A stretch of DNA of 64,000 bases from Ranitomeya imitator (GCF_032444005.1 NC_091282.1:71734001-71798000); one strand, 5' to 3'; counted from the stretch's first letter, positions 21,782 to 60,937 are shown. The notes: generated by a model from the sequence alone, not told the origin. Numbers and translations are program-made.

Positions 21782-21822
21782 TTGCCTGATGAAGAGACGT
21801 ATGTAGTCTCGAAAGCTTGCAA
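21782..21822 (+). ncRNA. Minimal hammerhead-like motif in the pLTR of the second Penelope
   Basis: UUGC-CUGAUGA-A-GAGAC(GUAUGUA)GUCUC-GAAA-GCUU/GCAA; stem III is reduced to the palindrome AGCU and could form only as a dimer. Confidence 0.55.
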
Positions 21823-21864
21823 TTTGTTACCATCTTTTCAGTTAGCCATTAAAAGGTATCAACC

Positions 21865-23044
21865 GTTTGATACCGTGCCGCACAAGAGGTTGGTACACAA
21901 AATGAGAATGCTTGGTCTGGGGGAAAATGTGTGTAAATGGGTTAGTAACTGGCTTAGTGATAGAAAGCAGAGGGTGGTTATAAATGGTATAGTCTCTAAC
22001 TGGGTCGCTGTGACCAGTGGGGTACCGCAGGGGTCAGTATTGGGGCCTGTTCTCTTCAAGATATTCATTAATGATCTGGTAGAAGGTTTACACAGTAAAA
22101 TATCGATATTTGCAGATGATACAAAACTATGTAAAGCAGTTAATACAAGAGAAGATAGTATTCTGCTACAGATGGATCTGGATAAGTTGGAAACTTGGGC
22201 TGAAAGGTGGCAGATGAGGTTTAACAATGATAAATGTAAGGTTATACACATGGGAAGAGGGAATCAATATCACCATTACACACTGAATGGGAAACCACTG
22301 GGTAAATCTGACAGGGAGAAGGACTTGTGGATCCTGGTTAATGATAAACTTACCTGGAGCAGCCAGTGCCAGGCAGCAGCTGCCAAGGCAAACAAGATCA
22401 TGGGGTGCATTAAAAGAGGTCTGGATACACATGATGAGAGCATTATACTGCCTCTGTACAAATCCCTAGTTAGACCGCACATGGAGTACTGTGTCCAGTT
22501 TTGGGCACCGGTGCTCAGGAAGGATATAATGGAACTAGAGAGAGTACAAAGGAGGGCAACAAAATTAATAAAGGGGATGGGAGAACTACAATACCCAGAT
22601 AGATTAGCGAAATTAGGATTATTTAGTCTAGAAAAAAGACGACTGAGGGGCGATCTAATAACCATGTATAAGTATATAAGGGGACAATACAAATATCTCG
22701 CTGAGGATCTGTTTATACCAAGGAAGGTGACGGGCACAAGGGGGCATTCTTTGCGTCTGGAGGAGAGAAGGTTTTTCCACCAACATAGAAGAGGATTCTT
22801 TACTGTTAGGGCAGTGAGAATCTGGAATTGCTTGCCTGAGGAGGTGGTGATGGCGAACTCAGTCGAGGGGTTCAAGAGAGGCCTGGATGTCTTCCTGGAG
22901 CAGAACAATATTGTATCATACAATTATTAGGTTCTGTAGAAGGACGTAGATCTGGGGATTTATTATGATGGAATATAGGCTGAACTGGATGGACAAATGT
23001 CTTTTTTCGGCCTTACTAACTATGTTATGTTACTATGTTATGTT
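21865..23044 (+). mobile_element. 5'-truncated CR1 LINE (RT C-half open to the native stop at 22930) inserted in the Penelope pLTR
   Basis: FDTVPH, GVPQGSVLGP, IFADDTKL; CR1 3' end with (TACTATGT)-like tail; AACC duplicated at 21861-64 and 23045-48. Confidence 0.92.
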
Positions 23045-23350
23045 AACCACTGAGGACTCTCAAATCTAAATATTTTTATATCTACTGGCTAACACGGTAC
23101 CAAGATATATTTCTTTCCTGTATAAATTAGGTGGGAAGTTAGGAATCTAACGATCTTAAAAGTCAAGATGGTCAAGAAAAGACATTGTTGTGATTTCAAA
23201 TACTAAAAATAAGAGGATGAATATTTATTGGTTGGGATTACAGAAATGTAATGGTTATTCAACCCTTAGAAAGTCAAAGAGAGAGTATTAATTGAGGAGT
23301 CTGGGTCAGCCATGGCTTGGTCACGATGTGTATAAATCTAGGTCATCCTC

Positions 23351-23555
23351 TTACTGCTGATCATACAGCGGAGTGATTGTTCCGTCCTTCCACTCGATCA
23401 GGATCTCTCCATGCCTCAGGGTCGTTGAGTTAGAATCTGGACCCGGATAATCAGACAGGTCGACCTTGCCGGTTAAAGGGGATTGCTCATAGGGAGAACC
23501 AAATTTATGGTGAGGTTTGACATGATTTGGTAGTGCTGATAAAAGTTTCCGTTTC
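23351..23555 (-). CDS. Coding exon 6, cytoplasmic tail to the stop codon
   Basis: TTTTACCTTCCAG|G AAA CGG AAA; 67 codons to TAA; the only long open frame, and phase 2 matches exon 5. Confidence 0.85.
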
Positions 23556-26500
23556 CTGGAAGGTAAAATAATATTTTAATATTACACCTTTAAATTTATG
23601 TATAACATTTGCTAAATATTCTGTACTAGCCTTGTAATGAGTATTTAAAGAGGAATTGTCATCAGGTCAAAAGTGGCCAGTTCCTGTCTCTATTATATTC
23701 CTGCTACTCCCTTGTGTTATCTGTTTTCTGTTTTTTAAAAATCCGCCATACCGTTCCAGAGATATTGGCCTTTTTATTTAGTGTTAATGTTTCTGGCCTT
23801 TACTAAGGGGCGTGGCTCACAGGGTAATAATGTGTAAAAGCCCAAAGACACGCCCAGGAGAATTATGTGAGCCACGCCCCTTTAGTAAAGGTCCTAAAAA
23901 TTAGTGCAAGATAAAAAGACCCATATTTCTGGCACTATATGGTGGATTTTTAAAAAGAAAAAAATGGAATCTTCAGGACAGCGTCAGGAATAAAATAAGA
24001 GCAAAAACTACCCACTTTGGACCTGGTGACAGGTTCTCTTTAAATCAGACTTACTTGTTGACACGGACATTCAGTACAAGTATGATCACCCCTAGGATGA
24101 ATGTAAAGGGGCTTAAAATCAACATGGCGATTCTCCATCCACTGCCTGTGAGAAGAGGAGGAATATTAATAATAATAATAATAATAATAATTTTATTTAT
24201 ATAGCGCCAACATATTCCGCAGCGCTTTACAAATTATAGAGGGGACTTGTACAGACAATAGACATTACAGCATAACAGAAATCACAGTTCAAAATAGATA
24301 CCAGGAGGAGTGAGGGCCCTGCTCGCAAGCTTACAAACTATGAGGAAAAGGGGAGACACGAGAGGTGGATGGTAACAATTGCTTTAGTTATTCGGACCGG
24401 CCATAGTGTAAGGCTCAGGTGTTCATGTAAAGCTGCATGAACCAGTTAACTGCCTAAGTATGTAGCAGTACAGACACAGAGGCTATTAACTGCATAAAGT
24501 GTATGAGAACATGATACGAGGAACTTTTTTTTTTATTTTTTTTTTTTACGATAGGCCACACCGGGATCATTAGGTTAATGTGTTGAGGCGGTAGGCCAAT
24601 CTGAACAAATGAGTTTTTAGGGCACGCTTAAAACTGTGTGGATTGGGGATTAATCGTATTAACCTGGGTACTGCATTCCAAAGAATCGGTGCAGCACGTG
24701 TAAAGTCTTGGAGACGGGAGTGGGAGGTTCTGATTATTGAGGATGCTAACCTGAGGTCATGAGCGGAGGGCACGGGTAGGGTGGTAGACTGAGACCAGAG
24801 AGGAGATGTAGGGTGGTGCTGAGCCATGGAGTGCTTTGTGGATGAGGGTAGTAGTTTTGTACTGGATTCTGGAGTGGATGGGTAGCCAGTGTAATGACTG
24901 GCACAAGGTAGAGGCATCGGTGTAACGGTTGGTGAGGAATATGATCCTGGCTGCAGCATTCAGGACAGATTGGAGCGGGGAGAGTTTGGTAAGAGGGAGG
25001 CCGATTAGTGGAGAGTTACCATAGTCCAGAATATTGAATAATGTTGAATGATAGTCCACAATACTTTGTAAATTACTTTCATCATATAACTCTATAGGGA
25101 TCAGAATTTTGTTTTTATAATACACAGCCCCAAATCAAACCACATGCGTCATTGAAAGAGGGGGTAGACCCCCGAAGTGTAAGGAAATGATTGCACAGTT
25201 GTAACTTAGAGTGAATATGTTTTTCATTATTCACTGTTTTTGCGTATTTGAAAGAAAGCCAAGATAAAAACTTTTCTAAAGTGCTAGAGAAACTTCTTGA
25301 GTGGTGTCCTTTCTAATATACTGTATACAAGGTCCCTTGCTTTCATTTGCAGGACTACAGAGTTTACAAAATGTTTTTGGCCTGCAGCCTCCAGTAGGGG
25401 GAGCTCTCTGTATACAGCTCTCACAGAACTCAGTATCCAACAGGTTTTCAGATTTCAGAAAACCCCCAGCCCCCTGCAGCTATTTGTTTAGTAAGAAAAA
25501 ACCTTCCGTTCAGCACTAAGATTACGACTCTGCTAGAGGTGCCTGATTGGTTGCAGTGCTGTCCACGTGACTTCAGCGCTGCAGACAACTAGTAGCGTCA
25601 GAAACTCTGTGCTGGACCCGGGGAGGGTGATTCAAGATTTTTTTTTTTTAAACAAACTGCAGCCGGGGGACCTCGGAAAACCCCCTTTAATAATCAGTCT
25701 TCAGTAAGGTAAAAATTTGAATTGACCAACCAAGCTGTACGATATGCAGACTTTATGGAAAATTGGTGCATGGCTGGACAGTTTTCTTTTTAGTTTTTTG
25801 TTTTTTTTCAAATCTGTGCCATTTAAGAGATATCTTTTTTTTGGGGACATAGCATAGTGAGGAATTATTTGCTTGACAAGTGTCAGTTTTTAATGGCACA
25901 GTCTATTGTAGCATATTATGCACTTGTGGCGCCCCAGGGTCCTGGTTGTCACAGTGACGCTGCTTTCCTCACAGGGAGAGTGATGTTACCTTTGGAAGTG
26001 ATGAAGGATATCTTTTATCAGGTAACCACAATGCACACAACATGTTCCCACTCCAGGCCACAAGGGGGAGCTTTTGATCCTATTTCTAGGCGACTCCCCT
26101 GCATATGCATATATTCTGGTTTGGAGGGAAGTTAGTCAGATTCTGTCAGAGGACAGAGGAGAGAGCAGTCAGACATGAAGTGTCAGAAGGACTGAAGGAG
26201 CCGTGAAGCCAGAGCCACTACAGCTCCTAAAGAAAGAGACATACAGAAGGAAACAACATCGTTCAGTGAGCGTTCCGGAGAGCGAAGCACAGGAGAGTGA
26301 TATCAGGGGAGACCAGCTATGAGCAGGCTGCCTCCCTCTGAAGCGCAGATAACCGGTATCCGGACCACCGAGGTTGTAAGGGACTCTATGACTTACAGCA
26401 GAGAGTGGCAAGTTACCTGTCCACCACACACACCTGAAGACACAGTAACACATAGAGCCCGGGGCGTGATAGAGTCCCTGTAAAAAGGCTCGAGTTACCT

Positions 26501-32500: not shown

Positions 32501-35500
32501 TGTCCGGAGATAAGTGACGTCAACAGTGTCCAGTGTCTGATTGGTTGCTGCCTGCTGCGAGCGACCAATCAGAAACGTGCCGTACTGTGACAAATTTAAT
32601 AATTTGTACCTTTCCTTACGCAATAATGGCAAGTATGCTTAATCTAATATATAATTGCCTAGAATACTACTTCCTGCAATTTGTGCCAACTTCCGTGGCT
32701 TTGTCCGGAGCTAATGTCCGGAGCTAATGTCCGGAGCTAATGTCCGGAGCTAATGTGCGGAGCTAATGTCCGGAGCTAATGTCCGGAGCTAATGTCCGGA
32801 GCTAATGTGCGGAGATAATGTCCGGAGCTAATGTCCGGAGCTAATGTCCGGAGATAAGTGACGTCAACAGTGTCCAGTGTCTGATTGGTTGCTGCCTGCT
32901 GCAAGCGACCAATCAGAAACGTGCCGTACTGTGACACACTCCGCCCGCCATATTGGTGTGATTTTTGAATTTTTACCTCACAGCAAGTTTCTACTGCGTG
33001 GAGGCGGGCCCAGTGACGTTGCTCTTCAAGCTCCTGCCGAATTTCGTCAAAAAAATTATAATACCATTTACCAAAACTATATATATTTAGTTGTGAAGTG
33101 GTTCAGTGACATTTTCACACCAATTTTGAACTTTTGTTTGGTGTTTTCTCCATATACTGCCTATTATTCACTGACTGTTATACTGAGAGACTGCCGTTTA
33201 TTAACCTCTTCTTTGCCACATTGGGTATATTGCTCTATTATTTGCCACATAAGGACATTGTCCATTATTGCCCAGCAATTTCTCTGCAATATAAACTGCC
33301 TATTTATTAATATCTGCATTCCTGCAAAGAACTATTGCCTATTATTAACTGGCTATTTTCCTACTACCTGACACTGCCTCTTATTAACCTGTTGTTTGCC
33401 ACCACCACGCTTAAAGCTGTTTAGCTTAGCCAACATGAGCTCTAATAGTAAGGATACTAATGACACAGAGCCCAAAGCTGCTGATGGCGCACGTAAGATT
33501 AGGTCTGATAGAAAGTATACTAATAATGCAGAGCAAAAAGACGCCGATGCCGCACGTAAGCGCAAACAGCGTGCTAACAAGAGTACAGAGGATAGATGCA
33601 AGCGCATGGACACTGTTAAGTATACTAATGACAAAGGCTACCGTGATGTGGTTGATGGGCATGCTTATATTAGCCCATCGGTGTACTATGAACGTTGATT
33701 TCTTAAATTTTACACTTCTGTAAAAATAAACACAAAAAATTTGGGTACACAAAAAGGCTTTTATTTCTGTTGTACCTATTAGAATTATTTAAAATGAAGG
33801 CTTAGCTAAGCCCAAGAGATGATTAAAAACGTTTCATACCAACCCATCAGATGTAAAATTACTGTGAAAATACCTGATGGGCACACAAGTATGCGCCAGT
33901 ATGGGTACTAAGAGGCTTTCCACATAATAATGAAATATTTTAAAATGTCATAGAACATACCAATATACATAGTTATTGATACATATTATTTATTATTTAC
34001 ATTATTGTTCTTAAGCAAAGAACCGTTGTTGTGGCATTTGCCACAACACGCAAAGTTGTCGTCTGATGTCTTTCATCCCTCCCCTCATAAGCATGTTCAC
34101 GGATCCTGTGTAACTGTACCTTAAATAACAAGAATTGTCAAGAGCTGGTGAGTGCAGCCATTTTTTGTTTCTTACTATTATTTATTAATTGTATTATTCT
34201 TACATTTGAATAAATAAAGTATATATGGATTCTAGACTCCCGATTCTTTAGAATCGGGCTGCCATCTAGTTTTGTATATTTAGGAAAGGGAGGCGATTTA
34301 AGCTTTGTTGTGTTTTTCGAAAAAAAATATTGTCTACATCTTCTTAGAGGACTAGAACCTGCAAATCCTTAATTTGCTGGTACAGTACATAGCAGTACTT
34401 TTCAGTTGACAAAGAGGGGGCACCCTACTCAGCCTAACCCCTTGTATGACATGACCGCTATTGACTTTGGTTAAATTCCCACAATTGGAATAATCTCTGA
34501 CAACAGTAGCAGGAGACAGATGTCACCTGTGTATCACAGCCAGCATCAGCTATGTCTGGAGTAGGAATGCATCCATACAACATACTGTATATGTAAGTCA
34601 CATGTCATAAAGGGGTTAAAAATTGTGCATGGTTAAAATAAAAAAAATACATAATTGGAATTGCCGCTGAAGTATCAACCAAAAGATTATAGTTGAATAA
34701 AAATTTTACCAAATGCTAAAAAAGGGAACAAAAATTTAAAAAAAAAACAGTTGTGATATTGCTGGGTTTTTTTTTACTATGTTTCCACTAAAAAATAATA
34801 AAAGTTAACCCATAAATTGTATAAATCACAAAAACTTACGCTACAAAAAAAAAACAAGCCATCTAAAACGTAACTCACCATCTTCCTCCACGACATAGAT
34901 CCTTTCAGTTAAATTCTCCCAGGAACTGACCTCCCACTCATCACCTAAAAAAGCATTAATGGCGAAAAGCAAATGAGACACCTACATGAATTCATACGTG
35001 ACATTGCAGATACTGTACAGCTCCATATCTCGGGTCTACCACTGATAGGCTTAGCTAAAATACACATTCCAGACTTGATTTGGGTTGGGTTGACAAGGAC
35101 CGACAGATCCATTCCTTCCAGGCATATTATAAGGTCAGTGTCACACTTGCGAGTGCAATGCGAGAAACTCGCCTCAATACCCGGCACTGCCGCCGGCACT
35201 CAGGACCGGAGCGTTCAGCTGCACAGAAATACATGTAGCCGCACACTCCGGTCCCGAGTGCCAGCGGCAGTGACGGGTATTGATGCCAGAGACTTGCGCG
35301 AGTTTCTCTCATTGCACTCCCAAGTGTGACCCCGGCCTAAGTGGCAGTCTCTGTGCCAAGCAAGACAAGCTTAGCTGTACTCCAAAGCAGGGTCTTCATG
35401 ATGGGCCCTATCCTCACTCTTTGTCCCTGCTTTTCAGCTAGAAGTCAGATGAACAGTTCTCAATGTATCTGGCACAACATTTCTTGTTTCCAGGCATTAC

Positions 35501-36212
35501 TATCCATCCCTCCTGGACTATCCCTACATTTAAATTAATTGGTTGTGGACTAAGAACACCTAGTGTTCGAAACGCGTTCAGCTGTATCATGGTCGTCCTT
35601 CCGTTCATTGGATATTGCTGATTTTTGACATGCAGTGTTTCCTCTTTTTTAAAATAATTTGGAATAAAAACTTTTGATTTTATATACTTTCCTGAGCTGG
35701 ATTCCTCTTTCATTCTCATCTATCCCTACATTTACTGGTTCTGTCAGCCGCGGAGATTTCCCATCCAGTTCCGCAGTACACCTGAGATCCGTTACCTTCC
35801 CTTCACGTGGTTCCTTTTCCATCTTCCTCTGTACATCAGAGGATGAGGCACTCTTCGTGACATCTGTATCCAGCCTTGAGCTCCGGACGTTGCATGAATG
35901 TCCGCAGGGAATTTCTGTAAGGCCTCCTACTGCCCCGAACAATGGATTATCATTTTCGCTATCAGTCCACTGCACCCTGAATTTGGCCTTGGTTAACAAA
36001 CTTCCCTATCTGACTGTCTATAAGGAAACAGTCCCTTTTCACTGCGGCTTTCACTCCCACTATGGGCTAGATCCAAACTTTAACTATATCTGTCTTTCAC
36101 TAACACTATGCACTACATTTCTATATACTAAGCACATTACACTTACAATGCTTATCAAAGTCTATCTTACCCTATAGTCACTACCTTATGCCCTAAAACT
36201 GAACCTATGTCT

Positions 36213-36259
<47 letters not shown>

Positions 36260-39200
36260 CAAAATACACATAACATTATTCACACGTTGCTACAATGCGA
36301 TTTGTGGCTTCTGGAGTACAAACGTGGCAGTACAGTCCACCACTCCTACATTAATACCAGAGGAGGTCAGTTATGGAGACAGCAGAGCGTTGGGGACGTT
36401 TCTGCCCTCTGCTCCTCAGCACTCGGGGATCCCGCTCTGTAACGTTACAGGGTCTCCACTTCATGGCTGAGTTACTGCGGCTCCTTCCGTTTTGCAATAA
36501 TATCACTCACAGGTGATGGAGGGAAGATTTAGGACAAAGAAATGTCCTGACCTGACTTGTTCCCCTGGTGGCTCCTATTACAGCTGGTATCAGCGAGCTC
36601 TTTAATAAAATAATGTCTACCTCTTTGTAAGAGTAATACTTCATAGAGAAATTCCATAATAAAGACAATCATTCATATTTATAGCATTCCATTATACTTA
36701 CTGGTGTCTGTTGTGTAAGTCAGTGCAGGCATCTGCGTCGCTGTGATCCTCTCGCTCATGTCTGGCAGACGGAGAGTAGATTGTATTTCATCTGTGATGT
36801 TGCTGGACTTTTCTACAACAGTCACTGTTATATGATGGATCACTGAGCAAGGGAAGATATATGCAAGAAGATTTATACACTGTATATATACCGTTTTTCA
36901 TTAAGTTTTCTATTTTATACATACAATATTATGCTATGTATCTACTTATACTGTCATTTTTCCGTATATTCCTTTTTTATACATTTGTGTATGGATTCAT
37001 AGAGTCTCTTTATCTGTTTGTATTTACTGACCTAGTCAGACTCATTACTGATATATTCCTTTGCTCCTCACATAGCGACAGTTTACGAAAAAAATTGCCA
37101 AATCGAAACATCACTACAGTCACAATTAAGGCGTACTACAGAATTATTCAATGTAACGTGCACTACGTTAATAAACTTTACAATTTTGCTTGAACTGAGT
37201 GTGCAGTGAATATTTTCAACTACATACTGGGACTCCACTTACACCTCAATTATACTAGGTGTGCGCACTTTGAGCTTCATTACAGATTAGGAAACACTGA
37301 CAGTGCTTCCTCCTCTGGACCCAGCTCTGCTATGTAGTGTAGCCAGGATGCAGAAAATATGTTGTTAATATTTTAACCTCCGGAGCTTTTTTGTTTTTTT
37401 CGTTTTTGTTTTTCACTCCCCTTCTTTCCAGAGCCATAACTTTTTTTATTTTTCCGTCAATATGGCCATGTGAGGGCTTATTTTTTGCGGGACGAGTTGT
37501 ACTTTTGAACAATACCATTGGTTTTACCATGTCATGTAACAGAAAATGGGAAAAAAAATTCCAAGTGCGATGAAATTGCAAAAAAAGCGCAATCCCACAC
37601 TGGTTTTTTGTTTGGCTTTTTTGCTAGGTTCACTAAATGCTAAAAATGACCTGCCATTATGATTCTCCAGGTCATTACGAGTTCATAGACACCAAACATG
37701 TTATTTTATATCTAAGTGGTGAAAAAAATTCCAAAGTTTGCTAAAAAAAAAAATAAAATAAAAAATTGTGCAATTTTCCAATACCCGTAGCGTTTCCATT
37801 TATCGTGATCTGGGGTCGGGTGATGGCTTATTCTTTGCATGCCGAGCTGATGTTTTTAATTATACTACTGTTGTGCAGATACGTTCTTTTCATTGCTCAT
37901 TATTGCGTGTTAATGCAATGTCGTGGGACGAAAAAAAAAGTAATTTTGGCGTTTTGATTTTTTTCTTGCTATGCCGTTTAGCAATCAGGTTAATCCTTTT
38001 TTTATTGATAGATGGGGCGATATGTGTAGGTTTGATTTTTTTATTGTTTTATTTTGATTGGGGCAAAAGGGGGGTGATTTGAACATTTATATTTTTTTCA
38101 TTTATTTAAACACTTTTTTTTTTATTCTGACATGCTTCAATAGCCTCCATGGGAGGCTAGAAGCATCCACTACTCGATCGCCTCTGCTACATAGAGGTGA
38201 TGCACAGATCACCTCTAGGCAGCAGAATTACAGGCTTGCTATGAGCGCCGACCACAGGGTGGCGCTCATAGCAATCTGCCATCAACCACCATAGAGATCT
38301 CGAGGAGACCGCTGGTTGTGATGGCAACGCACCGATGACCCCCTATCACGTAACGGGGGTCAGCGGTGCGCGTACTTTCGGCAGTGCGCTTGTTAAATGC
38401 CGCTGTCAGAGTTTGACAGCGGCATTTAACTAGTTATTGGGGGTAGGCGGATCGCGATTCCGCTCGCGCCAATTACGGGCACATGTCAGCTGTTGAAAAC
38501 AGCTGACATGTCATGGTTTTGAGGTGGGTTTCCCGCCGGAGCCCACCTCAAAGCGGGGGATACTACCAGCTAACGTACTATTCCATCAGCTGGCAGAAAG
38601 GGGTTAAAGTACCCTTCCTATCCAGGTCTTTTAGGATATTATGGGGGCACAGTATGAGAAATAAATAAAAATTATTTCATAAAAATAAAAATGAGATACC
38701 GCCAGTCTGAAAATCTGCCTCTCGCCCTGCTCTCATAATAAAATAAATTTACCAATTTATAAAAATAATTTCTATGGAAAGGGAAACGCAAGGTAATTTT
38801 TTTTTAGCAGTCCTACTGCTCAGTGTATAAATGGCGTCACTAAATGCCTCGGTTCACCGTTCAACCTACTTATTTAGATTACTGCCACTCATTCTATATT
38901 GAATGACAGTGTTGACTTGCCCAAAGCCAGTGCAGTCTGAAGATAAATCTCCATTCTGTAATCACTGAGCAGAAGAGAGCACAGAAATCACTCTCTCCTC
39001 ACTTCTAACATTGCTAGTGTTCTCTGCTATGACTTCAGTGCAGAAGAGACCACAGAAATCACTCTCTCCTCACTGCTGACATTGCTTGTGTTCTCTGCTA
39101 TGACTTCAGTGCAGAAGAGACCACAGAAATCACTCTCTCCTCACTGCTGACATTGCTAGTGTTCTCTGCTATGGCTTCAGTGCAGAAGAGACCACAGAAA

Positions 39201-42200: not shown

Positions 42201-45200
42201 ACCTGTATTAAAAACTGCATGTGAGTTTCCGGATGTAATGAAATTGTCACATGATTAATATTACAATGAACACATTATCATTATCCATGTTATAACGACT
42301 AATAATGCACTTTAGATGAGACATGGCCCCTATAATTCATTTTTTGTCTTACTTTCGTCGGATAATGTTGTCACTTGCTCTGGATCCTTCTTGGTACTTT
42401 GCTCGGGAGGCAATGATGGGCTGAAGCTCCCTGGAATATTGCTCTCTCCACAAACTGATAAATCCAACAGTGTTTTCCATTTGCTGAACTTATCCACTCC
42501 ACTTGACATGAACACTTTTTTGGTCCCTTGCTTGGCAGTCAGATGTAAGTTATGACCATAGAGAGTAAGGTAACCCATTGGGTCACACAGCCAGACCTGG
42601 TTCCTTCTCCCCGCACAAGGTTCTATCTTCAGGGTGTGAAAGTTGTGGGCTTTCATCACTGTTAGGCACTTGTTGCTATAGACATTAATGATGGATTTGG
42701 TGCCTAGGTCCCAGGTCCAGTACTGATAATCAGAAGTAATTTTACACTTGGCCAATGATACTCTGCCGGTGTCTTCAGCCGCATGGATACACTTCTCCAG
42801 CTGGAGGTTTCTTATCATGAAGTTCTGACCTTTGGTGACTGTAGATAAAGAAAAATACTATAAAAACTTTTTGTGTCACATCTTATCCAATAGTAACTAA
42901 TTACAGAGAAAAATATAAAATAAAACTGTGTTCATCATTACTCACTTTAACCTCTTCATTCTAAAATGTGTCTATACAAATGCACAGAGAATGGGAAACA
43001 AACAAGGAGAATTGAAGCTGCTAACACAGGAAGATAGATATGATGTCATAGGCATCACTGCAACTTGGTGGGATGATACACATGATTAGAAAACACAAAC
43101 ATTGAAGGCCACAACTTATTTATTAGAAACAGGATTAACAAGAGGGGAGGAGGTGTTGCATTGTATGTTAGGAAAATGTATATCTCCACAGAGATCCAAG
43201 CTTCAGATAATGGTAGCTCTAAAGAAACTGTTTGGGTAAGAATTCAAGGAGAGAAGAACAGAAAGGACACTGTTGTATTGTTCCACTCCTGGTTTTGGCT
43301 TACAAATACTGATGTAAAATACTGACCAAATACTGCTGGTGTGACGGCAGCCTTAGGAGGTAAGCAGAGAGCAGAATGAGGGGCCTGCAGCACTGAGGTG
43401 AAGCAGTGTGCTGCATCTATCACTATTAGGAAGCATGCTGAGAGCAGAATGAGGGGCTTGCAACACTGAGGAGAATCAGCATGTTGCATCTATCCCTATT
43501 AGGAAGCACATAGAGAGAAGAATAAGGGGCCTGCAGCACTGAGAAGCAGTGTGCAGCTGGGAAATATATTTTTTGGCAAATAAGAATAGCACCATCCATT
43601 CTGCTATGTGAAAATGGATGCACAGAGGATCAGAAGGAGATAAAAAAGATACAAAGGTAGAAGAAATTAAAAAAAATCAGATTCTGTGATTTTGAAAAAG
43701 AAAAGAAAATAAAACAGGCAGCAGGAATCAGGAATAAACATGTTATTCAATTGAAATTTTTAATTAAAATAAATTTGTTTTTTGTTCTGAGGAAGAAGTA
43801 AGTTACTTTGAAACGCATAGACATTAATAAAAGATGCATACCCTTCTTGTGTGTGCCCGGATTTGCCTTTCATTCACTAGAAGTGTGAAATTTCCACAAT
43901 TATCCCTTCGGCAAATCTTTATGTGATAATAGTGAAGTGATGTTAGAACCTGATAATACAATGTCTGACCTGTTGTATTGCAGTGCACAGTGGTCATACA
44001 TGCGCCATCAGGGATATTCGTGATAACAGTATGTGCCCACTCTGATACTGCATGTGATACTAGAATGTGTCCACTATCGTTCTCACTCTTATGGGAATAC
44101 TTATTACATCTTGTGTGTCCAGAAATAGTTTTTTTTTCACTGGCGCATATTTGTTTTTTTAACATCAGCACAGATTGTGAGCTATGGATATACTGATAAG
44201 AAATGTAAACTTTGGCCGCGATACATAAAAGTTGTTAGGAGCCCAGAGGGACGGCCATTGTCTCGCAGATCACAAGATGGGAGGAAACAGTAACATTAAG
44301 TAGTCAGACAGGAAATACCTGCTACTGCCAGGACACTAAGGGTACCGTCACACACTGCCATTTCGATTGCTACGACGGTACGATTCGTGACATTCCAGCG
44401 ATATCGTTACGATATCGCTGTGTCTGACACGCAGCAGCGATCAGGGATCCTGCTGAGAATCGTACGTCGTAGCAGATCGTTTAGAACTTTCTTTCGTCGC
44501 TGGATCTCCCGCTGGCATCGCTAGATTGGTGTGTGTGACACCGATCTAGCGATCTAGCGATGCGATCTAGCGATGCGTTCGCTTGTAACCAGGGTAAACA
44601 TCGGGTTACTAAGCGCAGGGCCGCGCTTAGTAACCCGATGTTTACCCTGGTTACAAGCGTAAAACTAAAAAAAAACAAACAGCACATACTTACATTCTGG
44701 TGTCCGTCAGGTCCCTTGCCGTCTGCTTCCCGCACTCAGTGACTGCCGGCCGTAAAGTGAAAGCAGAGCACAGCGGTGACGTGCTTTCACTTTCACTTTA
44801 CGGCCGGCAGTCAGTGAGTGCGGGAAGCAGACGGCAAGGGACCTGACGGACATCGGAATGTAAGTATGTGCTGTTTTTTTTTTTTTTACGCTGGTAACCA
44901 GGGTAAACATCGGGTTACTAAGCGCGGTCTGTGTGACAGCTCCCCAGCGACCACACTACGATTTACCTACGATCACGGCCAGGTCGTATCGCTGGTCGTG
45001 ATCGTAGGTAAATCGTATAGTGTGACGGTACCCTTACAGCAGAAGGACAATTACATTAAGCTTCAGCAATGCAAGTAATAGAATGCTATACAACAGGGAG
45101 AAATGCAAGATTCCACATCTGGGCAAGAAAAACAAAAAATACATCTATAGAATGGGAGAAGTAGAACTAAGCAACAGCACGCGTGAAAGAGACTTGGGTA

Positions 45201-57200: not shown

Positions 57201-58525
57201 ATTAACCCTGTGTGACCTATTGATGCGGCCTATGCAGCCTCAATAGTAAAAAGATCTAAAGTTAATAATAATAAAAAAAAATAAAAAATCATATACTCAC
57301 CTTCCGCCGCATTTCCCGATCCTCGCGACGCTCTGGTGACCGGTCCATGCATTGCAATCTCACAAGATGATGATGTAGTGGTCTCGCGAGACCGCTACGT
57401 CATCATCTCGCGAGACCGCAATGCACTCTTGAGACCGGAGAGCGCGAGGAGTGTCAGTAAACACTTCCTGGATCCAGGGGCCAACGGAAGGTGAGTATAT
57501 AACTATTTTTTACTTTAATTCTTTTTTTTTAACAGGGATATGATGCCCACATTGCTATATACTACGTTGGCTGTGTTATATACTACGTGGGCTGTGCAAT
57601 ATACTACGCGGGCTGTGCAACATACTGCGCGGGCTGTGCAACATACTACGCGGGCTGTGCAATATACTACATGGGCTGTGCAACATACTACGCGGGCTGT
57701 GCAATATACTACGTGGGCTGTGCAACGTGGCTGGGCAATATACTACGCGTGCTGGGCAATATACTACGCGGGCTGGGCAATATACTACGTGACTGGGCAA
57801 TATACTACGTGACTGGGCAATATACTACGTGACTGAGCAATATACTACGTGACTGGGCAATATACTACGCGGGCTGGGCAATATACTACGCGGACTGGGC
57901 AATATACTACGTGACTGGGCAATATACTACGTGACTGGGTAATATACTATGTGGCTGGGCAATATACTACGTGACTGGGCAATATACTATGTGGCCGGGT
58001 AATATACTACGTGACTGGGCAATATACTACGTGACTGGGTAATATACTATGTGGCTGGGCAATATACTATGTGGCTGGGCAATATACTATGTGACTGGGC
58101 AATATACTACGTGGCTGTGCAATATACTACGTGGCTGTGCAATATACTACGTCGCTGGGCAATATACTATGTGGCTGGGCAATATACTATGTGACTGGGC
58201 AATATACTACGTGGCTGTGCAATATACTACGTGGTTGGGCAATATACTACGTGACTGGGCAATATACTACGTGGTTGGGCAATATACTACGTGGTTGGGC
58301 AATATAGTATGTGACTGGGCAATATACTACGTGGTTGGGCAATATACTACGTGGCTGGGCAATATAGTATGTGACTGGGCAATATACTACGTGGTTGGGC
58401 AATATACTACGTGGCTGGGCAATATACTACGCGGCTGGGCAATATACTACGTGGGCTGTGCAATATACTACGTGGACATGCATATTCTAGAATACCCGAT
58501 GCGTTAGATTCGGGCCACCATCTAG

Positions 58526-58572
<47 letters not shown>

Positions 58573-60937
58573 TATATGCCCTCCATGCTGGTAATTATGT
58601 CCCTTATCCTGGTCCCATCCTGGTATATACAGTGGGGCAAAAAAGTATTTAGTCAGTCAGCAATAGTGCAAGTTCCACCACTTAAAAAGATGAGAGGTGT
58701 CTGTAATTTACACCATAGGTAGACCTCAACTATGGGAGACAAACTGAGAAAAAAAAAATCCAGAAAATCACATTGTCTGTTTTTTTAACTTTTTATTTGC
58801 ATATTATGGTGGAAAATAAGTATTTGGTCAGAAACAAAATTTCATCTCAATACTTTGTAATATATCCTTTGTTGGCAATGACAGAGGTCAAACGTTTTCT
58901 GTAAGTCTTCACAAGGTTGCCACACACTGTTGTTGGTATGTTGGCCCATTCCTCCATGCAGATCTCCTCTAGAGCAGTGATGTTTTTGGCTTTCCGCTTG
59001 GCAACACGGACTTTCAACTCCCTCCAAAGGTTTTCTATAGGGTTGAGATCTGGAGACTGGCTAGGCCACTCCAGGACCTTGAAATGCTTCTTACAAAGCC
59101 ACTCCTTCGTTGCCCTGGCGGTGTGCTTTGGATCATTGTCATGTTGAAAGACCCAGCCACGTTTCATCTTCAATGCCCTTGCTGATGGAAGGAGGTTTGC
59201 ACTCAAAATCTCACGATACATGACCCCATTCATTCTTTCATGTACCCGGATCAGTCGTCCTGGCCCCTTTGCAGAAAAACAGCCCCAAAGCATGATGTTT
59301 CCACCACCATGCTTTACAGTAGGTATGGTGTTTGATGGATGCAACTCAGTATTCTTTTTTCCTCCAAACACGACAAGTTGTGTTTCTACCAAACAGTTCC
59401 AGTTTGGTTTCATCAGACCATAGGACATTCTCCCAAAACTCCTCTGGATCATCCAAATGCTCTCTAGCAAACTTCAGACGGGCCCGGACATGTACTGGCT
59501 TAAGCAGTGGGACACGTCTGGCACTGCAGGATCTGAGTCCATGGTGGCGTAGTGTGTTACTTATGGTAGGCCTTGTTACATTGGTCCCAGCTCTCTGCAG
59601 TTCATTCACTAGGTCCCCCCGCGTGGTTCTGGGATTTTTGCTCACCGTTCTTGTGATCATTCTGACCCCACGGGGTGGGATTTTGCGTGGAGCCCCAGAT
59701 CGAGGGAGATTATCAGTGGTCTTGTATGTCTTCCATTTTCTAATTATTGCTCCCACTGTTGATTTCTTCACTCCAAGCTGGTTGGCTATTGCAGATTCAG
59801 TCTTCCCAGCCTGGTGCAGGGCTACAATTTTGTTTCTGGTGTCCTTTGACAGCTCTTTGGTCTTCACCATAGTGGAGTTTGGAGTCAGACTGTTTGAGGG
59901 TGTGCACAGGTGTCTTTTTATACTAATAACAAGTTTAAACAGGTGCCATTACAGGTAATGAGTGGAGGAAAGAGGAGCCTCTTAAAGAAGAAGTTACAGG
60001 TCTGTGAGAGCCAGAAATCTTGATTGTTTGTTTCTGACCAAATACTTATTTTCCACCATAATATGCAAATAAAATGTTAAAAAAAACAGACAATGTGATT
60101 TTCTGGATTTTTTTTTCTCAGTTTGTCTCCCATAGTTGAGGTCTACCTATGATGTAAATTACAGACGCCTCTCATCTTTTTAAGTGGTGGAACTTGCACT
60201 ATTGCTGACTGACTAAATACTTTTTTGCCCCACTGTATATCCCTCATCCTGGTATACGTCCCCCATTCTGCCGCCATATATTTAAGTATAATGCACTCCC
60301 CATAGCTCTCCCTATAGTACAATGCAATGCACTCCCAATATCCCACCCTATAGTATAATGCACCCCCATAGTCCTTCATACAGTGTAATGCACTCTCCAT
60401 AGTCATCTATGTAGTATAAAGCACAGCCTATAGTCATCCATATAGCATGAAGCACAACCCATAGTTATCCATGTAGTATAATGCACAGCCCATAGTCTTG
60501 TGACTATGTGACTATGCCATAACATATATTGTTCTATGGATTACAGAAATGGCCACTGGACCAGGGTCCTACAAATTGATTAGCTTGACTACTTAAACTA
60601 TCTGTATAATAATAATGATAATAAAAATAATAATATATTAATGACAACAGTATATATTGTATATAATTATATTAATCTAATAGTATAATATTATCTAACA
60701 ATAGAATACAAATAATATATGTATAGTGATACAAATAAAATAAATAAAAATAACAACAATATAATTGTATAATTCTTGGAGGATATTAACCAATAATAAC
60801 CATAATAAAATTATTATTGCTATTGTATTATTACTATATTGGTAGCGTTTTGTATCATTTTTATAAAGTAATACTTCTTACTTACCCATCGGGAGGATGC
60901 AGAGAGATGCCAGCAGCCACAGACTGGGAATTCCCAT
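23351..60937 (-). CDS. Six-exon gene, 346-aa type I membrane protein: signal peptide, ricin-B (CysR-like) lectin, T/S stalk, OST-beta/SLC51B-like TM region, cytoplasmic tail
   Basis: Exon lengths 52+486+141+66+91+205 = 1041 nt, all GT-AG, intron phases 1,1,1,1,2 consistent, open frame MGIPSLWLL...[25 protein letters not shown] on minus at 23229-23224. Confidence 0.85.
23649..24039. mobile_element. T2-family MITE (TTAA TSD) filling most of the 499-bp last intron
   Basis: TTAA|AGAGGAATTGTCATCAGGTCAAAAGTGG ... CCACTTTGGACCTGGTGACAGGTTCTCT|TTAA; ~28-bp imperfect TIR. Confidence 0.8.
24055..24145 (-). CDS. Coding exon 5, transmembrane helix ([30 protein letters not shown])
   Basis: CCTCCTCTTCTCACAG| ... 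AA|GTAAGT; 91 nt, phase 1/2; hydrophobic stretch followed by KKRK in the next exon. Confidence 0.88.
24168..25030 (-). mobile_element. 5'-truncated L2 LINE 3' fragment with (ATT)n tail
   Basis: LDY.NS.LIGLP...[12 protein letters not shown]...LHWLPI..RIQYK...[10 protein letters not shown]; 3' end AAAGCGCTGCGGAATATGTTGGCGCTATATAAATAAA(ATT)n. Confidence 0.9.
27579..28375 (-). mobile_element. Solo LTR of another Gypsy-type family nested in the internal region
   Basis: TGTTATGA...TTCACAACA termini; ~800 bp; interrupts the host internal ORF. No clean TSD; orientation tentative. Confidence 0.65.
28830..29372 (+). CDS. LTR-internal ORF with a cold-shock-domain-like segment and a T/A/P-rich tail (probably frameshifted at its 5' end)
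   Basis: GWSFI...EIFVN...LYPGDRVTY...[10 protein letters not shown] aligns by eye with CSD GFGFI...DVFVH...L.EG..V.F...G.KG..A.NV. Confidence 0.5.
   Translation: MCQGPGPQGPPDKPGWSFIKEPGLYAEIFVNRRDVESHLWEGHLDRDLYPGDRVTYTRHLGEKGWYALNLKKQRDIAPKLAKPKAPVAPPSAKVATTTNTPTVTPACTSKTTVCTITTTETAVAASPAITCTQATQTELITTCSCTQTRIVGTDNMFIIPGIRLEPNMSERSVQVLPKEP
31790..31922. repeat. 20-bp minisatellite (CCACTGAGCCACCGGGCTAA), ~6 copies
   Basis: Read directly. Confidence 0.9.
32202..34269 (+). mobile_element. Non-autonomous Helitron with a duplicated 5' end and 12-bp GTCCGGAGCTAA arrays
   Basis: A|TCTAATATATAATTG 5' ends at 32202 and 32643; 3' hairpin CCCGATTCT-TT-AGAATCGGG (34239-58) then CTAG|T at 34269; charged ORF remnant 33435-33698. 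Confidence 0.82.
34438..34615. mobile_element. Small piggyBac-like MITE
   Basis: CCCCTTGTATGACATG ... CATGTCATAAAGGGG|TTAA; left target site degenerate (CTAA). Confidence 0.6.
34879..34944 (-). CDS. Coding exon 4, juxtamembrane ([21 protein letters not shown])
   Basis: GCTTTTTTAG| ... G|GTGAGT; 66 nt, phase 1/1. Confidence 0.8.
35133..35337. mobile_element. PIF/Harbinger-type palindromic MITE
   Basis: TAA on both sides; long imperfect TIRs (GTCACACTTGCGAGTGCAATG / CATTGCACTCCCAAGTGTGAC). Confidence 0.75.
36702..36842 (-). CDS. Coding exon 3, Thr/Ser-rich stalk
   Basis: CTTCCCTTGCTCAG| ... A|GTAAGT; 141 nt, phase 1/1, open ([17 protein letters not shown]...TYTTDT). Confidence 0.82.
37377..38603. 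mobile_element. Non-autonomous piggyBac-like element related to 14733-18626
   Basis: TTAA flanks; AAAGGGG|TTAA right end; shared internal motif TTTTGCGGGACGAGTTG. Confidence 0.65.
38965..40994. repeat. 71-bp minisatellite, ~28-29 copies, intronic
   Basis: Unit CAGTGCAGAAGAGACCACAGAAATCACTCTCTCCTCACTGCTGACATTGCTAGTGTTCTCTGCTATGGCTT; repeated ORF offsets are multiples of 71 (142, 284, 426). Confidence 0.97.
42353..42838 (-). CDS. Coding exon 2, ricin-B/R-type lectin domain
   Basis: Acceptor TTTCTTTATCTACAG|; donor A|GTAAGA; paired Cys and QxW-like motifs (QYWTW, NQVWLC, SKWK) spaced as in mannose-receptor CysR domains. Confidence 0.92.
42960..43275 (+). mobile_element. Decayed CR1 endonuclease fragment
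   Basis: [18 protein letters not shown]...YDVIGIT.TWWD...RGGGVALYV. Confidence 0.8.
44340..45033. mobile_element. Harbinger-type MITE with internal inverted repeats
   Basis: GGGTACCGTCACAC ... GTGTGACGGTACCC with TWA flanks. Confidence 0.75.
45070..45290 (+). mobile_element. Decayed CR1 RT C-terminal fragment
   Basis: NREKCKI.HLG...[14 protein letters not shown]. Confidence 0.75.
45318..50174 (+). mobile_element. Non-autonomous Ty3/Gypsy LTR element (LTRs 45318-46907 and 48670-50174) with a gag remnant
   Basis: TGTAACA...TAACA/TGACA termini; 5-bp TSD GAAGG; PPT AAGGAAGGGGGGG; gag remnant PPRYYGDP...FLEQC...[13 protein letters not shown]...[12 protein letters not shown]; no RT or integrase. 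Confidence 0.9.
51001..51745. mobile_element. Harbinger-type MITE
   Basis: GGCCTCTTTCACA ... TGTGAAAGAGGCC with TAA/TTA flanks. Confidence 0.75.
51746..52755 (-). pseudogene. DD37E transposase pseudogene
   Basis: FSDE...HDNAPSH...DLNLIE with 37 residues between the second D and E; frameshifts around RRQQGGGG and N-terminal stops. Confidence 0.88.
52973..54011 (-). mobile_element. Non-autonomous Helitron, 3'-truncated, with a ~20-bp ACGTAGTATATTGCCCAG array (52975-53385)
   Basis: A|TCTACTATATAATTATCTAAGGGTCACTTCC on minus; same family as 56877-58525. Confidence 0.75.
55075..55350 (+). mobile_element. tRNA-derived V-SINE with an L2-type 3' tail
   Basis: A/B-box-like head GGTGGCGCAGTGG...GGTTCTAATCCC; V-domain GTTTGCGTGGGTTTCCTCCGGG...CCGGTTTCCTCCCACACTCC; tail matches the L2 at 24168. 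Confidence 0.85.
56801..56876 (+). mobile_element. Probable hAT-type MITE left end hosting the Helitron and Tc1
   Basis: CAGTGGCGTAACT terminus; no matching right TIR found. Confidence 0.35.
56877..58525 (+). mobile_element. Complete non-autonomous Helitron with a 20-21-bp GCAATATACTACGTGACTGG array (57560-58480)
   Basis: A|TC 5' end; 3' hairpin CCCGATGCGTTAGATTCGGG (58495-514) then CTAG|T. Confidence 0.88.
58630..60235 (-). mobile_element. Full-length (1606 bp) Tc1 DD34E copy with a 1-bp frameshift in the transposase
   Basis: Both TIRs and TA TSDs present; ORFs 59346-59870 and 58847-59470 together give the 340-aa protein; extra T near 59355. Confidence 0.95.
60886..60937 (-). CDS. Coding exon 1 (signal peptide [17 protein letters not shown])
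   Basis: Acceptor TTACAG|GAGATAATG at 60943, donor G|GTAAGT at 60885; phase 1 matches the lectin exon (…PM-V-TKG-QNF). Confidence 0.78.

What the first reader, a model, noticed from the sequence alone, without database searches (positions are those of the whole stretch)
23351..60937. Ricin-B lectin fused to an OST-beta-like membrane anchor: an unannotated-looking 346-aa receptor
Seen: a complete phase-consistent gene that the ORF track shows only as one fragment. The lectin domain follows the mannose-receptor CysR pattern but lacks FNII and CTLDs. The segment [19 protein letters not shown] resembles OST-beta WFFRVEDASPWNHSILAL, and the tail ends in [10 protein letters not shown]. My recollection, unverified, is that lectin-bearing OST-beta relatives exist in non-mammalian vertebrates. 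Inference: it is either an OST-alpha partner with a glycan-sensing ectodomain or a lectin receptor; mammalian SLC51B lacks such a domain.
Basis: partly seen in the sequence, partly recalled or inferred. Interest (0 to 1): 0.7.

Follow-up and report, generated by a model that had tools for sequence, protein, structure and literature searches.

The report
Lectin-bearing paralogue of transporter subunit OST-beta
This poison-frog gene is real and expressed, and encodes a single-pass membrane protein that joins a mannose-receptor-type sugar-binding domain to the membrane anchor and tail of OST-beta, the small partner subunit of the bile-acid exporter. It is an old, unstudied sister gene of OST-beta, found in fishes, amphibians, reptiles and birds, with no mammalian copy seen here.

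Summary
A six-exon minus-strand gene runs from the ATG at 60937 to the stop at 23351, with AG/GT at every junction. It totals 1008 nt, so 336 aa, not 346. Assembled transcripts from four studies splice exon 5 to exon 6 and end in poly(A).

- **Lectin domain:** exon 2 is an R-type lectin (Pfam 4e-12). Its closest solved relative is the mannose-receptor CysR domain, by profile (E 3e-18) and by fold (TM 0.80).
- **OST-beta homology:** the membrane-proximal motif, TM helix, basic stop-transfer and C-terminal GE..WKDG..L[YF] hairpin match bona fide OST-beta (hhalign 99.4%, E 9e-22). Pfam's OSTbeta model alone stays borderline.
- **Not SLC51B itself:** frogs, birds, turtles, coelacanth and teleosts each have both genes, and a tree splits them 100/99.
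- **Different neighbourhoods:** this clade (zebrafish si:dkey-245n4.2) lies beside NUDT2, MYORG and AQP3. SLC51B lies between MTFMT and RASL12.
- **Shared ancestry of the lectin:** many non-mammalian SLC51B proteins carry the same lectin, so it is probably ancestral.

Function is untested. The most likely role (about 45%) is a glycan-binding accessory subunit of an OST-alpha/TMEM184-type partner.

I found no paper describing it.

The parts
60886..60937 (-). Exon 1, coding part: ATG at 60937, 17-residue hydrophobic signal peptide, phase-1 donor gtaagt. The 5' UTR reaches at least 60971.
   Evidence: Sequence. 16/16 identity to the P0014 N-terminus. The related-species cDNA contig L004 aligns to 60971-60890.
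42353..42838 (-). Exon 2: R-type (ricin-B, CysR-like) beta-trefoil lectin domain with six Cys and QxW-type Trp, plus the start of the stalk.
   Evidence: Pfam Ricin_B_lectin 4.3e-12, 46.8 bits against a cut-off of 29. 85% identity to P0014. The family profile hits mannose-receptor CysR 1dqg at E 2.6e-18. Foldseek top hit is 1dqg, TMt 0.80.
36702..36812 (-). Exon 3: 37-codon Ser/Thr-rich stalk with an N-I-T sequon, phase 1 to 1.
   Evidence: Sequence with AG/GT. 79% identity to P0014 residues 175-217. Also present in E. coqui P0001. Predicted disordered in the orthologue model.
34879..34944 (-). Exon 4: 22-codon acidic juxtamembrane piece (…[14 protein letters not shown]), phase 1 to 1. It is skipped in some annotated isoforms of other frogs.
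   Evidence: Sequence. L004 aligns to 34930-34878. It lines up with the WF[FY]RxED pre-TM motif of OST-beta. Mantella isoform 2 and Rhinoderma X2 lack it.
24055..24145 (-). Exon 5: Trp-initiated transmembrane helix and the start of the basic stop-transfer (…NVRVNK), phase 1 to 2.
   Evidence: Sequence. 97% identity to P0014. Pfam OSTbeta on this exon alone is only E 0.088. A helix at 241-275 in the orthologue model. Contigs of four runs cover 24054-24146 and continue upstream.
23351..23555 (-). Exon 6, coding part: KRK, a roughly 45-residue linker, the conserved C-terminal [22 protein letters not shown], and the TAA stop at 23353-23351.
   Evidence: Translation. 90% identity to P0014. The tail motif is nearly invariant in the family, shared with non-mammalian OST-beta, and predicted as a beta-hairpin with pLDDT about 85.
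23188..23350 (-). 3' UTR with AATAAA at 23229-23224 and poly(A) addition at about 23188-23191.
   Evidence: Contigs of runs X5 and X15 end here in runs of 17 and 23 T, which are poly(A) on the minus strand. The 499-nt intron 23555-24053 is skipped in all four runs.

Best explanation
The window holds the poison-frog orthologue of an unnamed vertebrate gene, zebrafish si:dkey-245n4.2, listed as 'uncharacterized protein LOC…' in frogs, reptiles and birds. It is an ancient paralogue of SLC51B (OST-beta).

Shown here:
- It is a spliced, polyadenylated, conserved gene of 336 codons.
- The protein is a type I membrane protein. In order it has a signal peptide, a CysR-type R-lectin beta-trefoil, a disordered glycosylated stalk, an acidic juxtamembrane motif, a Trp-initiated TM helix, a basic NKKRK stop-transfer, a linker, and a C-terminal GE..WKDG..L[YF] beta-hairpin.
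- From the juxtamembrane motif to the C-terminus it is homologous to OST-beta.
- It is a separate clade with its own chromosomal neighbourhood.
- Non-mammalian SLC51B often carries the same lectin, so the lectin-plus-anchor architecture most likely predates the duplication. Mammalian OST-beta would then be the trimmed form.

Inferred, about 45% likely: like OST-beta, it uses its TM helix and flanks to pair with a seven-TM protein of the OST-alpha/TMEM184 fold. It would act as that protein's trafficking and activity subunit. The lectin would add recognition of a glycan, possibly an anionic or sulfated one, on the extracellular or luminal side.

The duplication probably dates to the early vertebrate genome doublings. 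That step is inferred from the human map positions of the neighbouring genes, recalled from memory.
For: **Gene model and expression**
- Exon arithmetic and splice sites.
- cDNA contig of a related frog.
- Same-species contigs from four studies join E5 to E6 and carry poly(A).

**Lectin**
- Pfam 4.3e-12.
- Family profile against PDB: mannose-receptor CysR is top, E 2.6e-18, aligned end to end.
- Foldseek top hit 1dqg, TMt 0.80, rmsd 2.3 Å, on a model with pLDDT above 90 in the lectin.
- Six Cys and four Trp are invariant or nearly so (C102: 90% or more) across both clades.

**OST-beta homology**
- 23 of 24 family members hit Pfam OSTbeta at E <= 1. Two pass the gathering score, at 28.5 and 27.7 bits against 27.
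- A profile of the TM and tail alone pulled out short proteins at E 1e-6 to 1e-11 from 1.84 billion sequences. These score 33-91 bits on Pfam OSTbeta (nine of the ten scanned: 55-91), and those looked up are named OST-beta by NCBI.
- hhalign of clade A against canonical OST-beta: 99.4%, E 9.2e-22, 106 columns.
- Canonical non-mammalian OST-beta against human 9ljg_B: E 8.5e-16.

**Paralogy**
- The A|B split has 100/99 support, with frog, bird, turtle, coelacanth and teleost on both sides.
- Pyxicephalus has a canonical 134-aa OST-beta. X. tropicalis SLC51B is used as a single-copy gene in PMC11342244.

**Synteny**
- Clade A lies next to NUDT2 in gharial and turtle.
- In ostrich it lies between a GH31 gene (MYORG-like) and NUDT2.
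- In sardine it lies next to an aquaporin.
- Zebrafish order is aqp3a, si:dkey-245n4.2, wdr54 (PMC9210284).
- Leatherback SLC51B, which bears the lectin, lies between MTFMT-type and RASL12-type genes.
Against: - No partner was tested.
- The human acidic di-leucine motif, needed for alpha-beta association (PMC4924846), is absent here.
- The residue after the TM-initial Trp is Arg or Lys, not the Asn of OST-beta.
- The pre-TM acidic motif is conserved only in neobatrachian frogs within this clade. Reptile, bird and fish members have unrelated sequence there.
- Pfam OSTbeta is below its cut-off for the nearest orthologue (23.0 bits) and for the window's TM exon alone (13.3 bits).
- A profile of this clade alone reaches human OST-beta only at E 0.26.
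- The window itself contains no neighbouring gene, so synteny is shown only in relatives. X. laevis has a different 3' neighbour, a VIT/VWA gene.
- The joined protein from this window was never searched, by instruction. Full-length statements rest on the 85-100% identical orthologue P0014.
Confidence: 0.6

Rival explanations
1. It is a stand-alone lectin receptor. The CysR-type domain captures a glycan ligand. The conserved cytoplasmic WKDG hairpin recruits a cytosolic sorting or signalling partner. The OST-beta-like TM helix is only inherited baggage, and no seven-TM transporter is involved.
For: - The tail is the most conserved part of the protein, [14 protein letters not shown] nearly invariant from teleosts to frogs. 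It is far more conserved than in SLC51B, which suggests a clade-specific cytosolic interaction.
- The motifs needed for alpha-beta association in human OST-beta (the di-leucine, and Asn after Trp) are missing (PMC4924846).
- The closest lectin relatives are endocytic receptors: mannose receptor and DEC-205.
Against: - The TM helix itself is strongly conserved (W, M, L, L, S, P, G, I and N invariant). That is unusual for a passive anchor and typical of a helix that packs against another membrane protein.
- It shares its Trp, Gly and basic-cluster positions with OST-beta.
- No classical endocytic motif is evident in the tail.
Confidence: 0.3
2. It is simply the frog orthologue of SLC51B (OST-beta) that kept the ancestral lectin domain, and works with OST-alpha in bile-acid export.
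For: True SLC51B of turtle, shark, bird and fishes does carry such a lectin domain. The anchor and tail are homologous.
Against: - Frogs have a separate canonical OST-beta: Pyxicephalus P0077 and X. tropicalis SLC51B.
- The tree splits the two clades 100/99.
- Relatives of this gene lie by NUDT2, MYORG and AQP3, not between MTFMT and RASL12.
Confidence: 0.03
3. It is a decaying or mis-assembled gene model with no function.
For: Exon 4 is skipped in some annotated isoforms of other frogs. The introns are full of transposons.
Against: - The frame is intact over six exons.
- Spliced polyadenylated transcripts appear in four studies.
- Orthologues are conserved from teleosts to birds, with invariant Cys, Trp and tail residues.
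Confidence: 0.02

Closest known systems
OST-beta / SLC51B (Pfam PF15048), accessory subunit of the OST-alpha/beta bile-acid and steroid-sulfate exporter
   Same: - Single-pass N-out topology.
- An acidic motif before a Trp-initiated TM helix.
- A conserved Gly inside the helix.
- A basic N[KR][KR][KR]K stop-transfer.
- In non-mammalian OST-beta, the same C-terminal GE..WKDG..L[YF] motif, and often the same N-terminal lectin.
- hhalign 99.4%, E 9e-22.
   Different: - It is a separate clade (100/99) in a different chromosomal neighbourhood.
- It has Lys or Arg instead of Asn after the Trp.
- It has no acidic di-leucine motif.
- Its tail is much more strongly conserved.
- Every full-length member I examined has the lectin.
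- No transport or partner data exist.
- A 2018 commentary calls SLC51A and SLC51B the only known members of the family (PMC5924743, as listed).
Cysteine-rich (CysR) R-type lectin domain of the mannose receptor family (MRC1, LY75/DEC-205)
   Same: - Best sequence-profile match (E 2.6e-18) and best fold match (TMt 0.80).
- Collinear over the whole domain, including the N-terminal F-[LM]-I-x-N…C start, three disulfide-forming Cys pairs, and the S-[KR]-W-K strand.
- The position of MR Trp117 is aromatic (Phe) here.
   Different: - No FNII domain or C-type lectin domains follow. The domain is attached by a disordered stalk to an OST-beta-type anchor.
- The position of MR Asn102 is a conserved Lys inside an A-K-Q-G-T-K-K stretch, so ligand specificity may differ.
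- The roles of MR Trp117 and Asn102 in binding sulfated sugar are recalled from the literature, not checked here.
Zebrafish si:dkey-245n4.2 and RefSeq 'uncharacterized protein LOC…' models (e.g. X. laevis LOC108718863, T. guttata LOC105760850)
   Same: They are orthologues of the window's gene with the same architecture, the same tail and roughly the same length, 322-349 aa.
   Different: Nothing beyond species divergence. None has a name, a described function or, in the library searched, a paper about it. It appears only in gene lists.

Membership tests
OST-beta family (Pfam PF15048 / SLC51B-like) | Score above Pfam's gathering threshold (27 bits) on the OSTbeta model | tested here: inconclusive
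   The window's TM exon alone scores 13.3 bits. The nearest orthologue P0014 scores 23.0 bits, E 9e-5. Two clade members pass, at 28.5 and 27.7 bits. 23 of 24 hit at E <= 1. The joined window protein was not scanned, by instruction.
OST-beta family (Pfam PF15048 / SLC51B-like) | Demonstrable homology to bona fide OST-beta across the juxtamembrane motif, TM helix and cytoplasmic tail | tested here: met
   hhalign of the clade profile against 14 canonical OST-beta sequences gives 99.4%, E 9.2e-22, 106 columns. The exhaustive HMMER search recovers named OST-beta proteins at E 1e-6 to 1e-11.
OST-beta family (Pfam PF15048 / SLC51B-like) | Single TM helix, N-terminus outside, positive-inside cluster | tested here: met
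   Signal peptide in exon 1. One helix at 241-275 in the orthologue model. N-K-K-R-K follows immediately after it.
OST-beta family (Pfam PF15048 / SLC51B-like) | Conserved Trp-Asn at the start of the TM segment. That it is required for function in mouse Ost-beta is my recollection of Christian et al. 2012; the paper is not held. | tested here: not met
   The Trp is invariant, but the next residue is Arg or Lys throughout this clade, against Asn (sometimes Lys or Thr) in SLC51B.
OST-beta family (Pfam PF15048 / SLC51B-like) | Extracellular acidic di-leucine motif (EL20L21EE), needed for alpha-beta association in human (PMC4924846) | tested here: not met
   Exon 4 reads …[14 protein letters not shown], with no Leu-Leu. 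The LLWF[FY]R block of SLC51B is absent in this clade.
OST-beta family (Pfam PF15048 / SLC51B-like) | Orthology to SLC51B: position between MTFMT and RASL12, and placement inside the SLC51B clade | tested here: not met
   The tree splits the clades 100/99. Relatives lie by NUDT2, MYORG and AQP3, while turtle SLC51B lies between Formyl_trans and Ras genes. The window itself holds no neighbour gene.
OST-beta family (Pfam PF15048 / SLC51B-like) | Physical association with OST-alpha, and requirement for its trafficking and transport | not testable with these tools
No experiment was possible.
R-type lectin / mannose-receptor CysR domain | Ricin_B_lectin profile above threshold, and a beta-trefoil fold with three disulfides | tested here: met
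   46.8 bits against a cut-off of 29. The model has 12 strands with pLDDT above 90. Six Cys are conserved (five invariant, C102 in 90% or more). 1dqg is the top hit by fold and by profile.
R-type lectin / mannose-receptor CysR domain | Mannose-receptor family architecture: CysR, then FNII, then tandem CTLDs | tested here: not met
   Only a stalk, a TM helix and a tail follow the lectin. No FNII or CTLD hit appears in any of the 24 members.
R-type lectin / mannose-receptor CysR domain | Carbohydrate binding | not testable with these tools
   Only the alignment to the MR ligand-pocket positions is available: Phe for Trp117 and Lys for Asn102.

The most novel reading that the evidence does not exclude
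Bony vertebrates other than mammals have a second, lectin-equipped beta-type subunit for the OST-alpha/TMEM184 transporter fold. It either partners one of the orphan TMEM184 proteins or gives OST-alpha a second, glycan-gated mode. On this reading the ancestral OST-beta was itself a CysR-type lectin, so glycan recognition was originally built into this transporter system and was lost in mammals.
Probability: 0.3. Interest if true: 0.75.

Novelty: new variant of a known kind. Interest (0 to 1): 0.5.

Why it matters
OST-alpha/beta is the basolateral bile-acid and steroid-sulfate exporter. Its structure was solved only recently, its fold links it to the orphan TMEM184 proteins (PMC13346981), and SLC51 has been described as a two-gene family (PMC5924743).

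This gene adds three points:
- A third OST-beta-type gene exists across non-mammalian bony vertebrates.
- The beta subunit ancestrally carried a mannose-receptor-type lectin and a conserved cytoplasmic hairpin. Human OST-beta shows neither.
- Both points give concrete, cheap experiments on what the beta subunit does beyond chaperoning, and on whether TMEM184 proteins also have beta partners.

It is a finding in comparative genomics and not a new mechanism, and the gene models already sit unnamed in RefSeq.

Tried and rejected
- **Pfam on single exons.** Only the lectin is significant. OSTbeta on the TM exon is E 0.088, and the tail and acidic exons have no hit. Single-exon scans are therefore too weak to decide.
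- **Clade-only profile against PDB.** Human OST-beta is the top hit but at E 0.26, which is not evidence by itself. The link needed non-mammalian OST-beta as a bridge.
- **Neighbour genes in the window.** tblastn with gharial NUDT2 exons found nothing. Frog intergenic distances are too large, so synteny was read in relatives.
- **X. laevis and Hymenochirus flanks.** These were uninformative: a VIT/VWA gene and an 87-aa ORF.
- **Orthology to SLC51B.** Rejected.
- **Literature.** 'SLC51B' with 'ricin' gave 0 papers. No paper listed for 'organic solute transporter' with 'lectin domain' holds both terms. si:dkey-245n4.2 appears only in gene lists. Christian et al. 2012 is not held, and a search for its residue names found nothing.
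- **Joined protein not searched.** Exons were searched by reference, and the annotated orthologue P0014 stood in for full-length analyses.
- **Complex prediction not used.** No OST-alpha or TMEM184 sequence was available by reference.
- **Absence from mammals not proven.** No mammal appeared among the named hits. One search scored only 8000 candidates and listed 50 proteins, and most of the 98 representatives were not looked up by name.

Full report
**1. The observation**

Reading the DNA around them gives six exons:

| Exon | Coordinates | Length (nt) | Content |
|---|---|---|---|
| E1 | 60937-60886 | 52 | ATG in a good context, hydrophobic signal peptide |
| E2 | 42838-42353 | 486 | lectin |
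| E3 | 36812-36702 | 111 | Ser/Thr stalk |
| E4 | 34944-34879 | 66 | acidic juxtamembrane piece |
| E5 | 24145-24055 | 91 | TM helix |
| E6 | 23555-23351 | 202 + stop | tail and TAA |

Every intron starts with GT and ends with AG. The phases fit, and the sum is 1008 nt, or 336 codons. The tail also continues for nine residues after [10 protein letters not shown].

A tblastn of the annotated 336-aa Dendrobates tinctorius protein P0014 matches each exon in order, at 79-100% identity and without stops inside the exon bounds. A 1536-nt transcript contig of another frog (L004, Logan SRR12112769) aligns to E1, E2, E4, E5, E6 and the 3' UTR in order.

In this species, contigs from four runs of four studies cover 23188/23232-23554, skip exactly 499 nt, resume at 24054-24146 and run on for a further 226 to 810 nt. 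For the two contigs long enough to reach the 5' end (780 and 810 nt upstream) that length fits E1-E4 plus a short 5' UTR. Two of them end in 17 and 23 T, which are poly(A) on the minus strand, downstream of an AATAAA. The gene is therefore real, spliced as modelled at the one junction I could lay, and expressed.

Earlier notes of this scan call the genome the mimic poison frog. The near-identity to dendrobatid proteins agrees with that.

Exons were searched by reference, and P0014 served as the full-length proxy.

**2. The ectodomain**

- E2 scores 46.8 bits (E 4.3e-12) on Pfam Ricin_B_lectin, against a cut-off of 29.
- A model of P0014 built on 45 relatives has pLDDT above 90 over residues 21-148 and twelve strands.
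- Its best Foldseek match in the PDB is the mannose-receptor CysR domain 1dqg (E 1.6e-8, TM by target 0.80, rmsd 2.3 Å). More MR CysR entries follow, and only then other beta-trefoils.
- The family profile finds the same domain first by sequence, at E 2.6e-18, aligned from residue 3 to 131 of 135. That is ahead of plant ricin-type B chains at 2e-14 and DEC-205 at 2e-7.
- Six Cys and the Trp of the QxW-type repeats are invariant or nearly so (C102: 90% or more) in both clades.
- No FNII or C-type lectin domain follows.

In the alignment to 1dqg, the position of MR Trp117 is a conserved Phe, and that of Asn102 is a conserved Lys within A-K-Q-G-T-K-K. I recall from the literature that those two MR residues hold the sulfated sugar. 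That recollection was not checked here, so a preference for anionic glycans is only a suggestion.

**3. The anchor and tail**

Taken alone, Pfam's OSTbeta model is borderline:

| Query | Score |
|---|---|
| Window TM exon | 13.3 bits |
| P0014 | 23.0 bits |
| Two relatives | 28.5 and 27.7 bits (cut-off 27) |
| All 24 family members | 23 hit at E <= 1 |

. A profile of the clade's TM and tail puts human OST-beta first among 177,635 PDB sequences, but only at E 0.26.

The decisive step was an exhaustive HMMER search of 1.84 billion representatives with that profile. Besides the clade itself, it returned short proteins of 127-181 aa at E 1e-6 to 1e-11. These score 33-91 bits on Pfam OSTbeta (nine of the ten scanned score 55-91). 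Those looked up are named OST-beta or SLC51B by NCBI in shark, coelacanth, bichir, teleost, caecilian, frog, lizard and bird.

They share four features with the window's protein:
- the Trp-initiated helix with a fixed Gly;
- the basic cluster after the helix;
- the acidic residues before the helix;
- most tellingly, the C-terminal motif G-[ED]-[IV]-x-[IV]-x-W-K-D-G-x-x-[TS]-x-L-[YF].

A profile-profile comparison of the clade (23 sequences) with 14 canonical OST-beta proteins gives 99.4% probability, E 9.2e-22, over 106 columns. The canonical non-mammalian profile in turn hits human OST-beta at E 8.5e-16, but only over human residues 17-101. The WKDG tail finds no counterpart in the human protein.

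In the model, the helix spans 241-275 and the tail forms a small beta-hairpin with pLDDT about 85. The stalk and linker are disordered.

**4. Orthologue or paralogue**

The clade with the tail [11 protein letters not shown][IV]TPL[YF] includes the following:
- all major frog lineages;
- axolotl and X. laevis LOC108718863;
- crocodilians, turtles and squamates;
- ostrich and zebra finch;
- coelacanth and lungfish;
- many teleosts, where it is called si:dkey-245n4.2.

Canonical OST-beta exists beside it in frog (Pyxicephalus, 134 aa), lizard, bird, turtle, coelacanth and teleosts. X. tropicalis SLC51B is used as a single-copy gene in PMC11342244.

A maximum-likelihood tree of 31 proteins separates the two groups with 100/99 support. 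Each side roughly follows the species tree.

The neighbourhoods differ:

| Gene | Species | Neighbours |
|---|---|---|
| Clade gene | Gharial, Emydura | convergent with NUDT2 (the exon ORFs read in the gharial locus L001 as Ap4A hydrolase, by my recollection of the human protein; Emydura rests on a NUDIX hit to a 149-aa product) |
| Clade gene | Ostrich | between a GH31 gene (MYORG-like) and NUDT2 |
| Clade gene | Sardine | next to an aquaporin and WDR54 |
| Clade gene | Zebrafish | aqp3a, si:dkey-245n4.2, wdr54 (PMC9210284) |
| SLC51B | Leatherback turtle | between a methionyl-tRNA formyltransferase-type gene and a Ras-type gene |

The leatherback arrangement is the MTFMT-SLC51B-RASL12 order that I know from human 15q22.31.

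NUDT2, MYORG and AQP3 are neighbours on human 9p13.3. From established knowledge of the human map, 9p13 and 15q21-22 share several paralogue pairs: TPM2/TPM1, TLN1/TLN2, AQP3-7/AQP9 and UBAP1/UBAP1L. A whole-genome-duplication origin is therefore likely. This last step is inference from memory, not a tool result.

**5. An unexpected extension**

Many proteins that are SLC51B by name, motif, tree and (for the turtle) synteny carry the same N-terminal lectin:
- horn shark (313 aa);
- leatherback (287 aa);
- rifleman bird (275 aa, partial);
- tiger barb (332 aa);
- anchovy;
- sturgeon and bowfin, which NCBI lists only as uncharacterized or hypothetical proteins and which are SLC51B here by motif and tree.

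The lectin-plus-anchor architecture therefore most likely predates the duplication. The short mammalian OST-beta, and the short forms annotated in some frogs, lizards and fishes, would be derived or alternative forms.

I found no paper that says this. A 2018 commentary calls SLC51A and SLC51B the only known members of the family (PMC5924743).

**6. How it most likely works**

Shown:
- topology and domain order;
- homology of the anchor and tail to OST-beta;
- strong purifying conservation of the helix and the hairpin.

[quoted passage not shown] A helix conserved at nine positions from fish to frog is more typical of a helix that packs against a partner than of a passive anchor.

I therefore put about 45% on a beta-subunit role with SLC51A or a TMEM184 paralogue, in which the lectin adds glycan recognition outside the cell or in the secretory pathway. 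I put about 30% on a stand-alone lectin receptor that signals or sorts through its hairpin tail.

Points against a simple OST-beta-like role:
- no acidic di-leucine motif (PMC4924846);
- Lys or Arg instead of Asn after the Trp;
- a pre-TM segment that is not conserved outside neobatrachian frogs.

**7. Verdict**

The gene is a paralogue of SLC51B, not SLC51B itself. Function is open.

It is a new variant of a known kind. The gene models exist in RefSeq as 'uncharacterized', and the architecture also occurs in annotated non-mammalian SLC51B. However, neither the paralogue nor the lectin-bearing ancestry of OST-beta appears in the literature I could search.

Noticed in passing
window 51746-52588 (-) and 58847-59870 (-): Two Tc1/mariner-type transposase remnants sit in intron 1. 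The first scores DDE_3 1e-10. The second scores Sleeping-Beauty-type HTH 5e-23, HTH_Tnp_Tc3_2 4e-24 and DDE_3 8e-14, and its two ORFs overlap in different frames, so it is broken by a frameshift.
   Followed up: partly
window 26169-27100 and 30687-31490: Two copies of one repeat lie in intron 4. They include identical 61-aa ORFs at 26601-26786 and 31102-31287. Between them is the retroelement noted by another finding (s1-271853).
   Followed up: no
window 39938-40996 (+): A tandem array in intron 2 gives four near-identical 68-aa ORFs at spacings of 426, 284 and 142 bp.
   Followed up: no
window 53013-53314 and 57540-58507: Minisatellites open in several frames (peptide repeats such as [15 protein letters not shown]), on both strands, in intron 1.
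   Followed up: no
window 44300-47100 and 48500-50100: Two large related GC-rich blocks in intron 1 hold long low-complexity ORFs on both strands. A 297-aa ORF at 47227-48120 lies between them and has no Pfam hit.
   Followed up: partly
window 24093: All four transcript-like runs read C where the window has T. On the minus strand this is a synonymous Leu codon change in the TM exon, so probably a polymorphism.
   Followed up: partly
P0059, P0066, P0085, P0102, P0122; locus L009 10001-17011: Bona fide SLC51B of shark, turtle, carp, sturgeon and a bird carries an N-terminal ricin-B/CysR lectin that human OST-beta lacks. Some species also have short annotated forms, so alternative first exons or promoters may produce lectin-plus and lectin-minus OST-beta.
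   Followed up: partly
L010 21393-35598 against 10001-27496: In ostrich the clade gene and the convergent NUDT2 gene overlap by about 6 kb at their 3' ends, as annotated.
   Followed up: no
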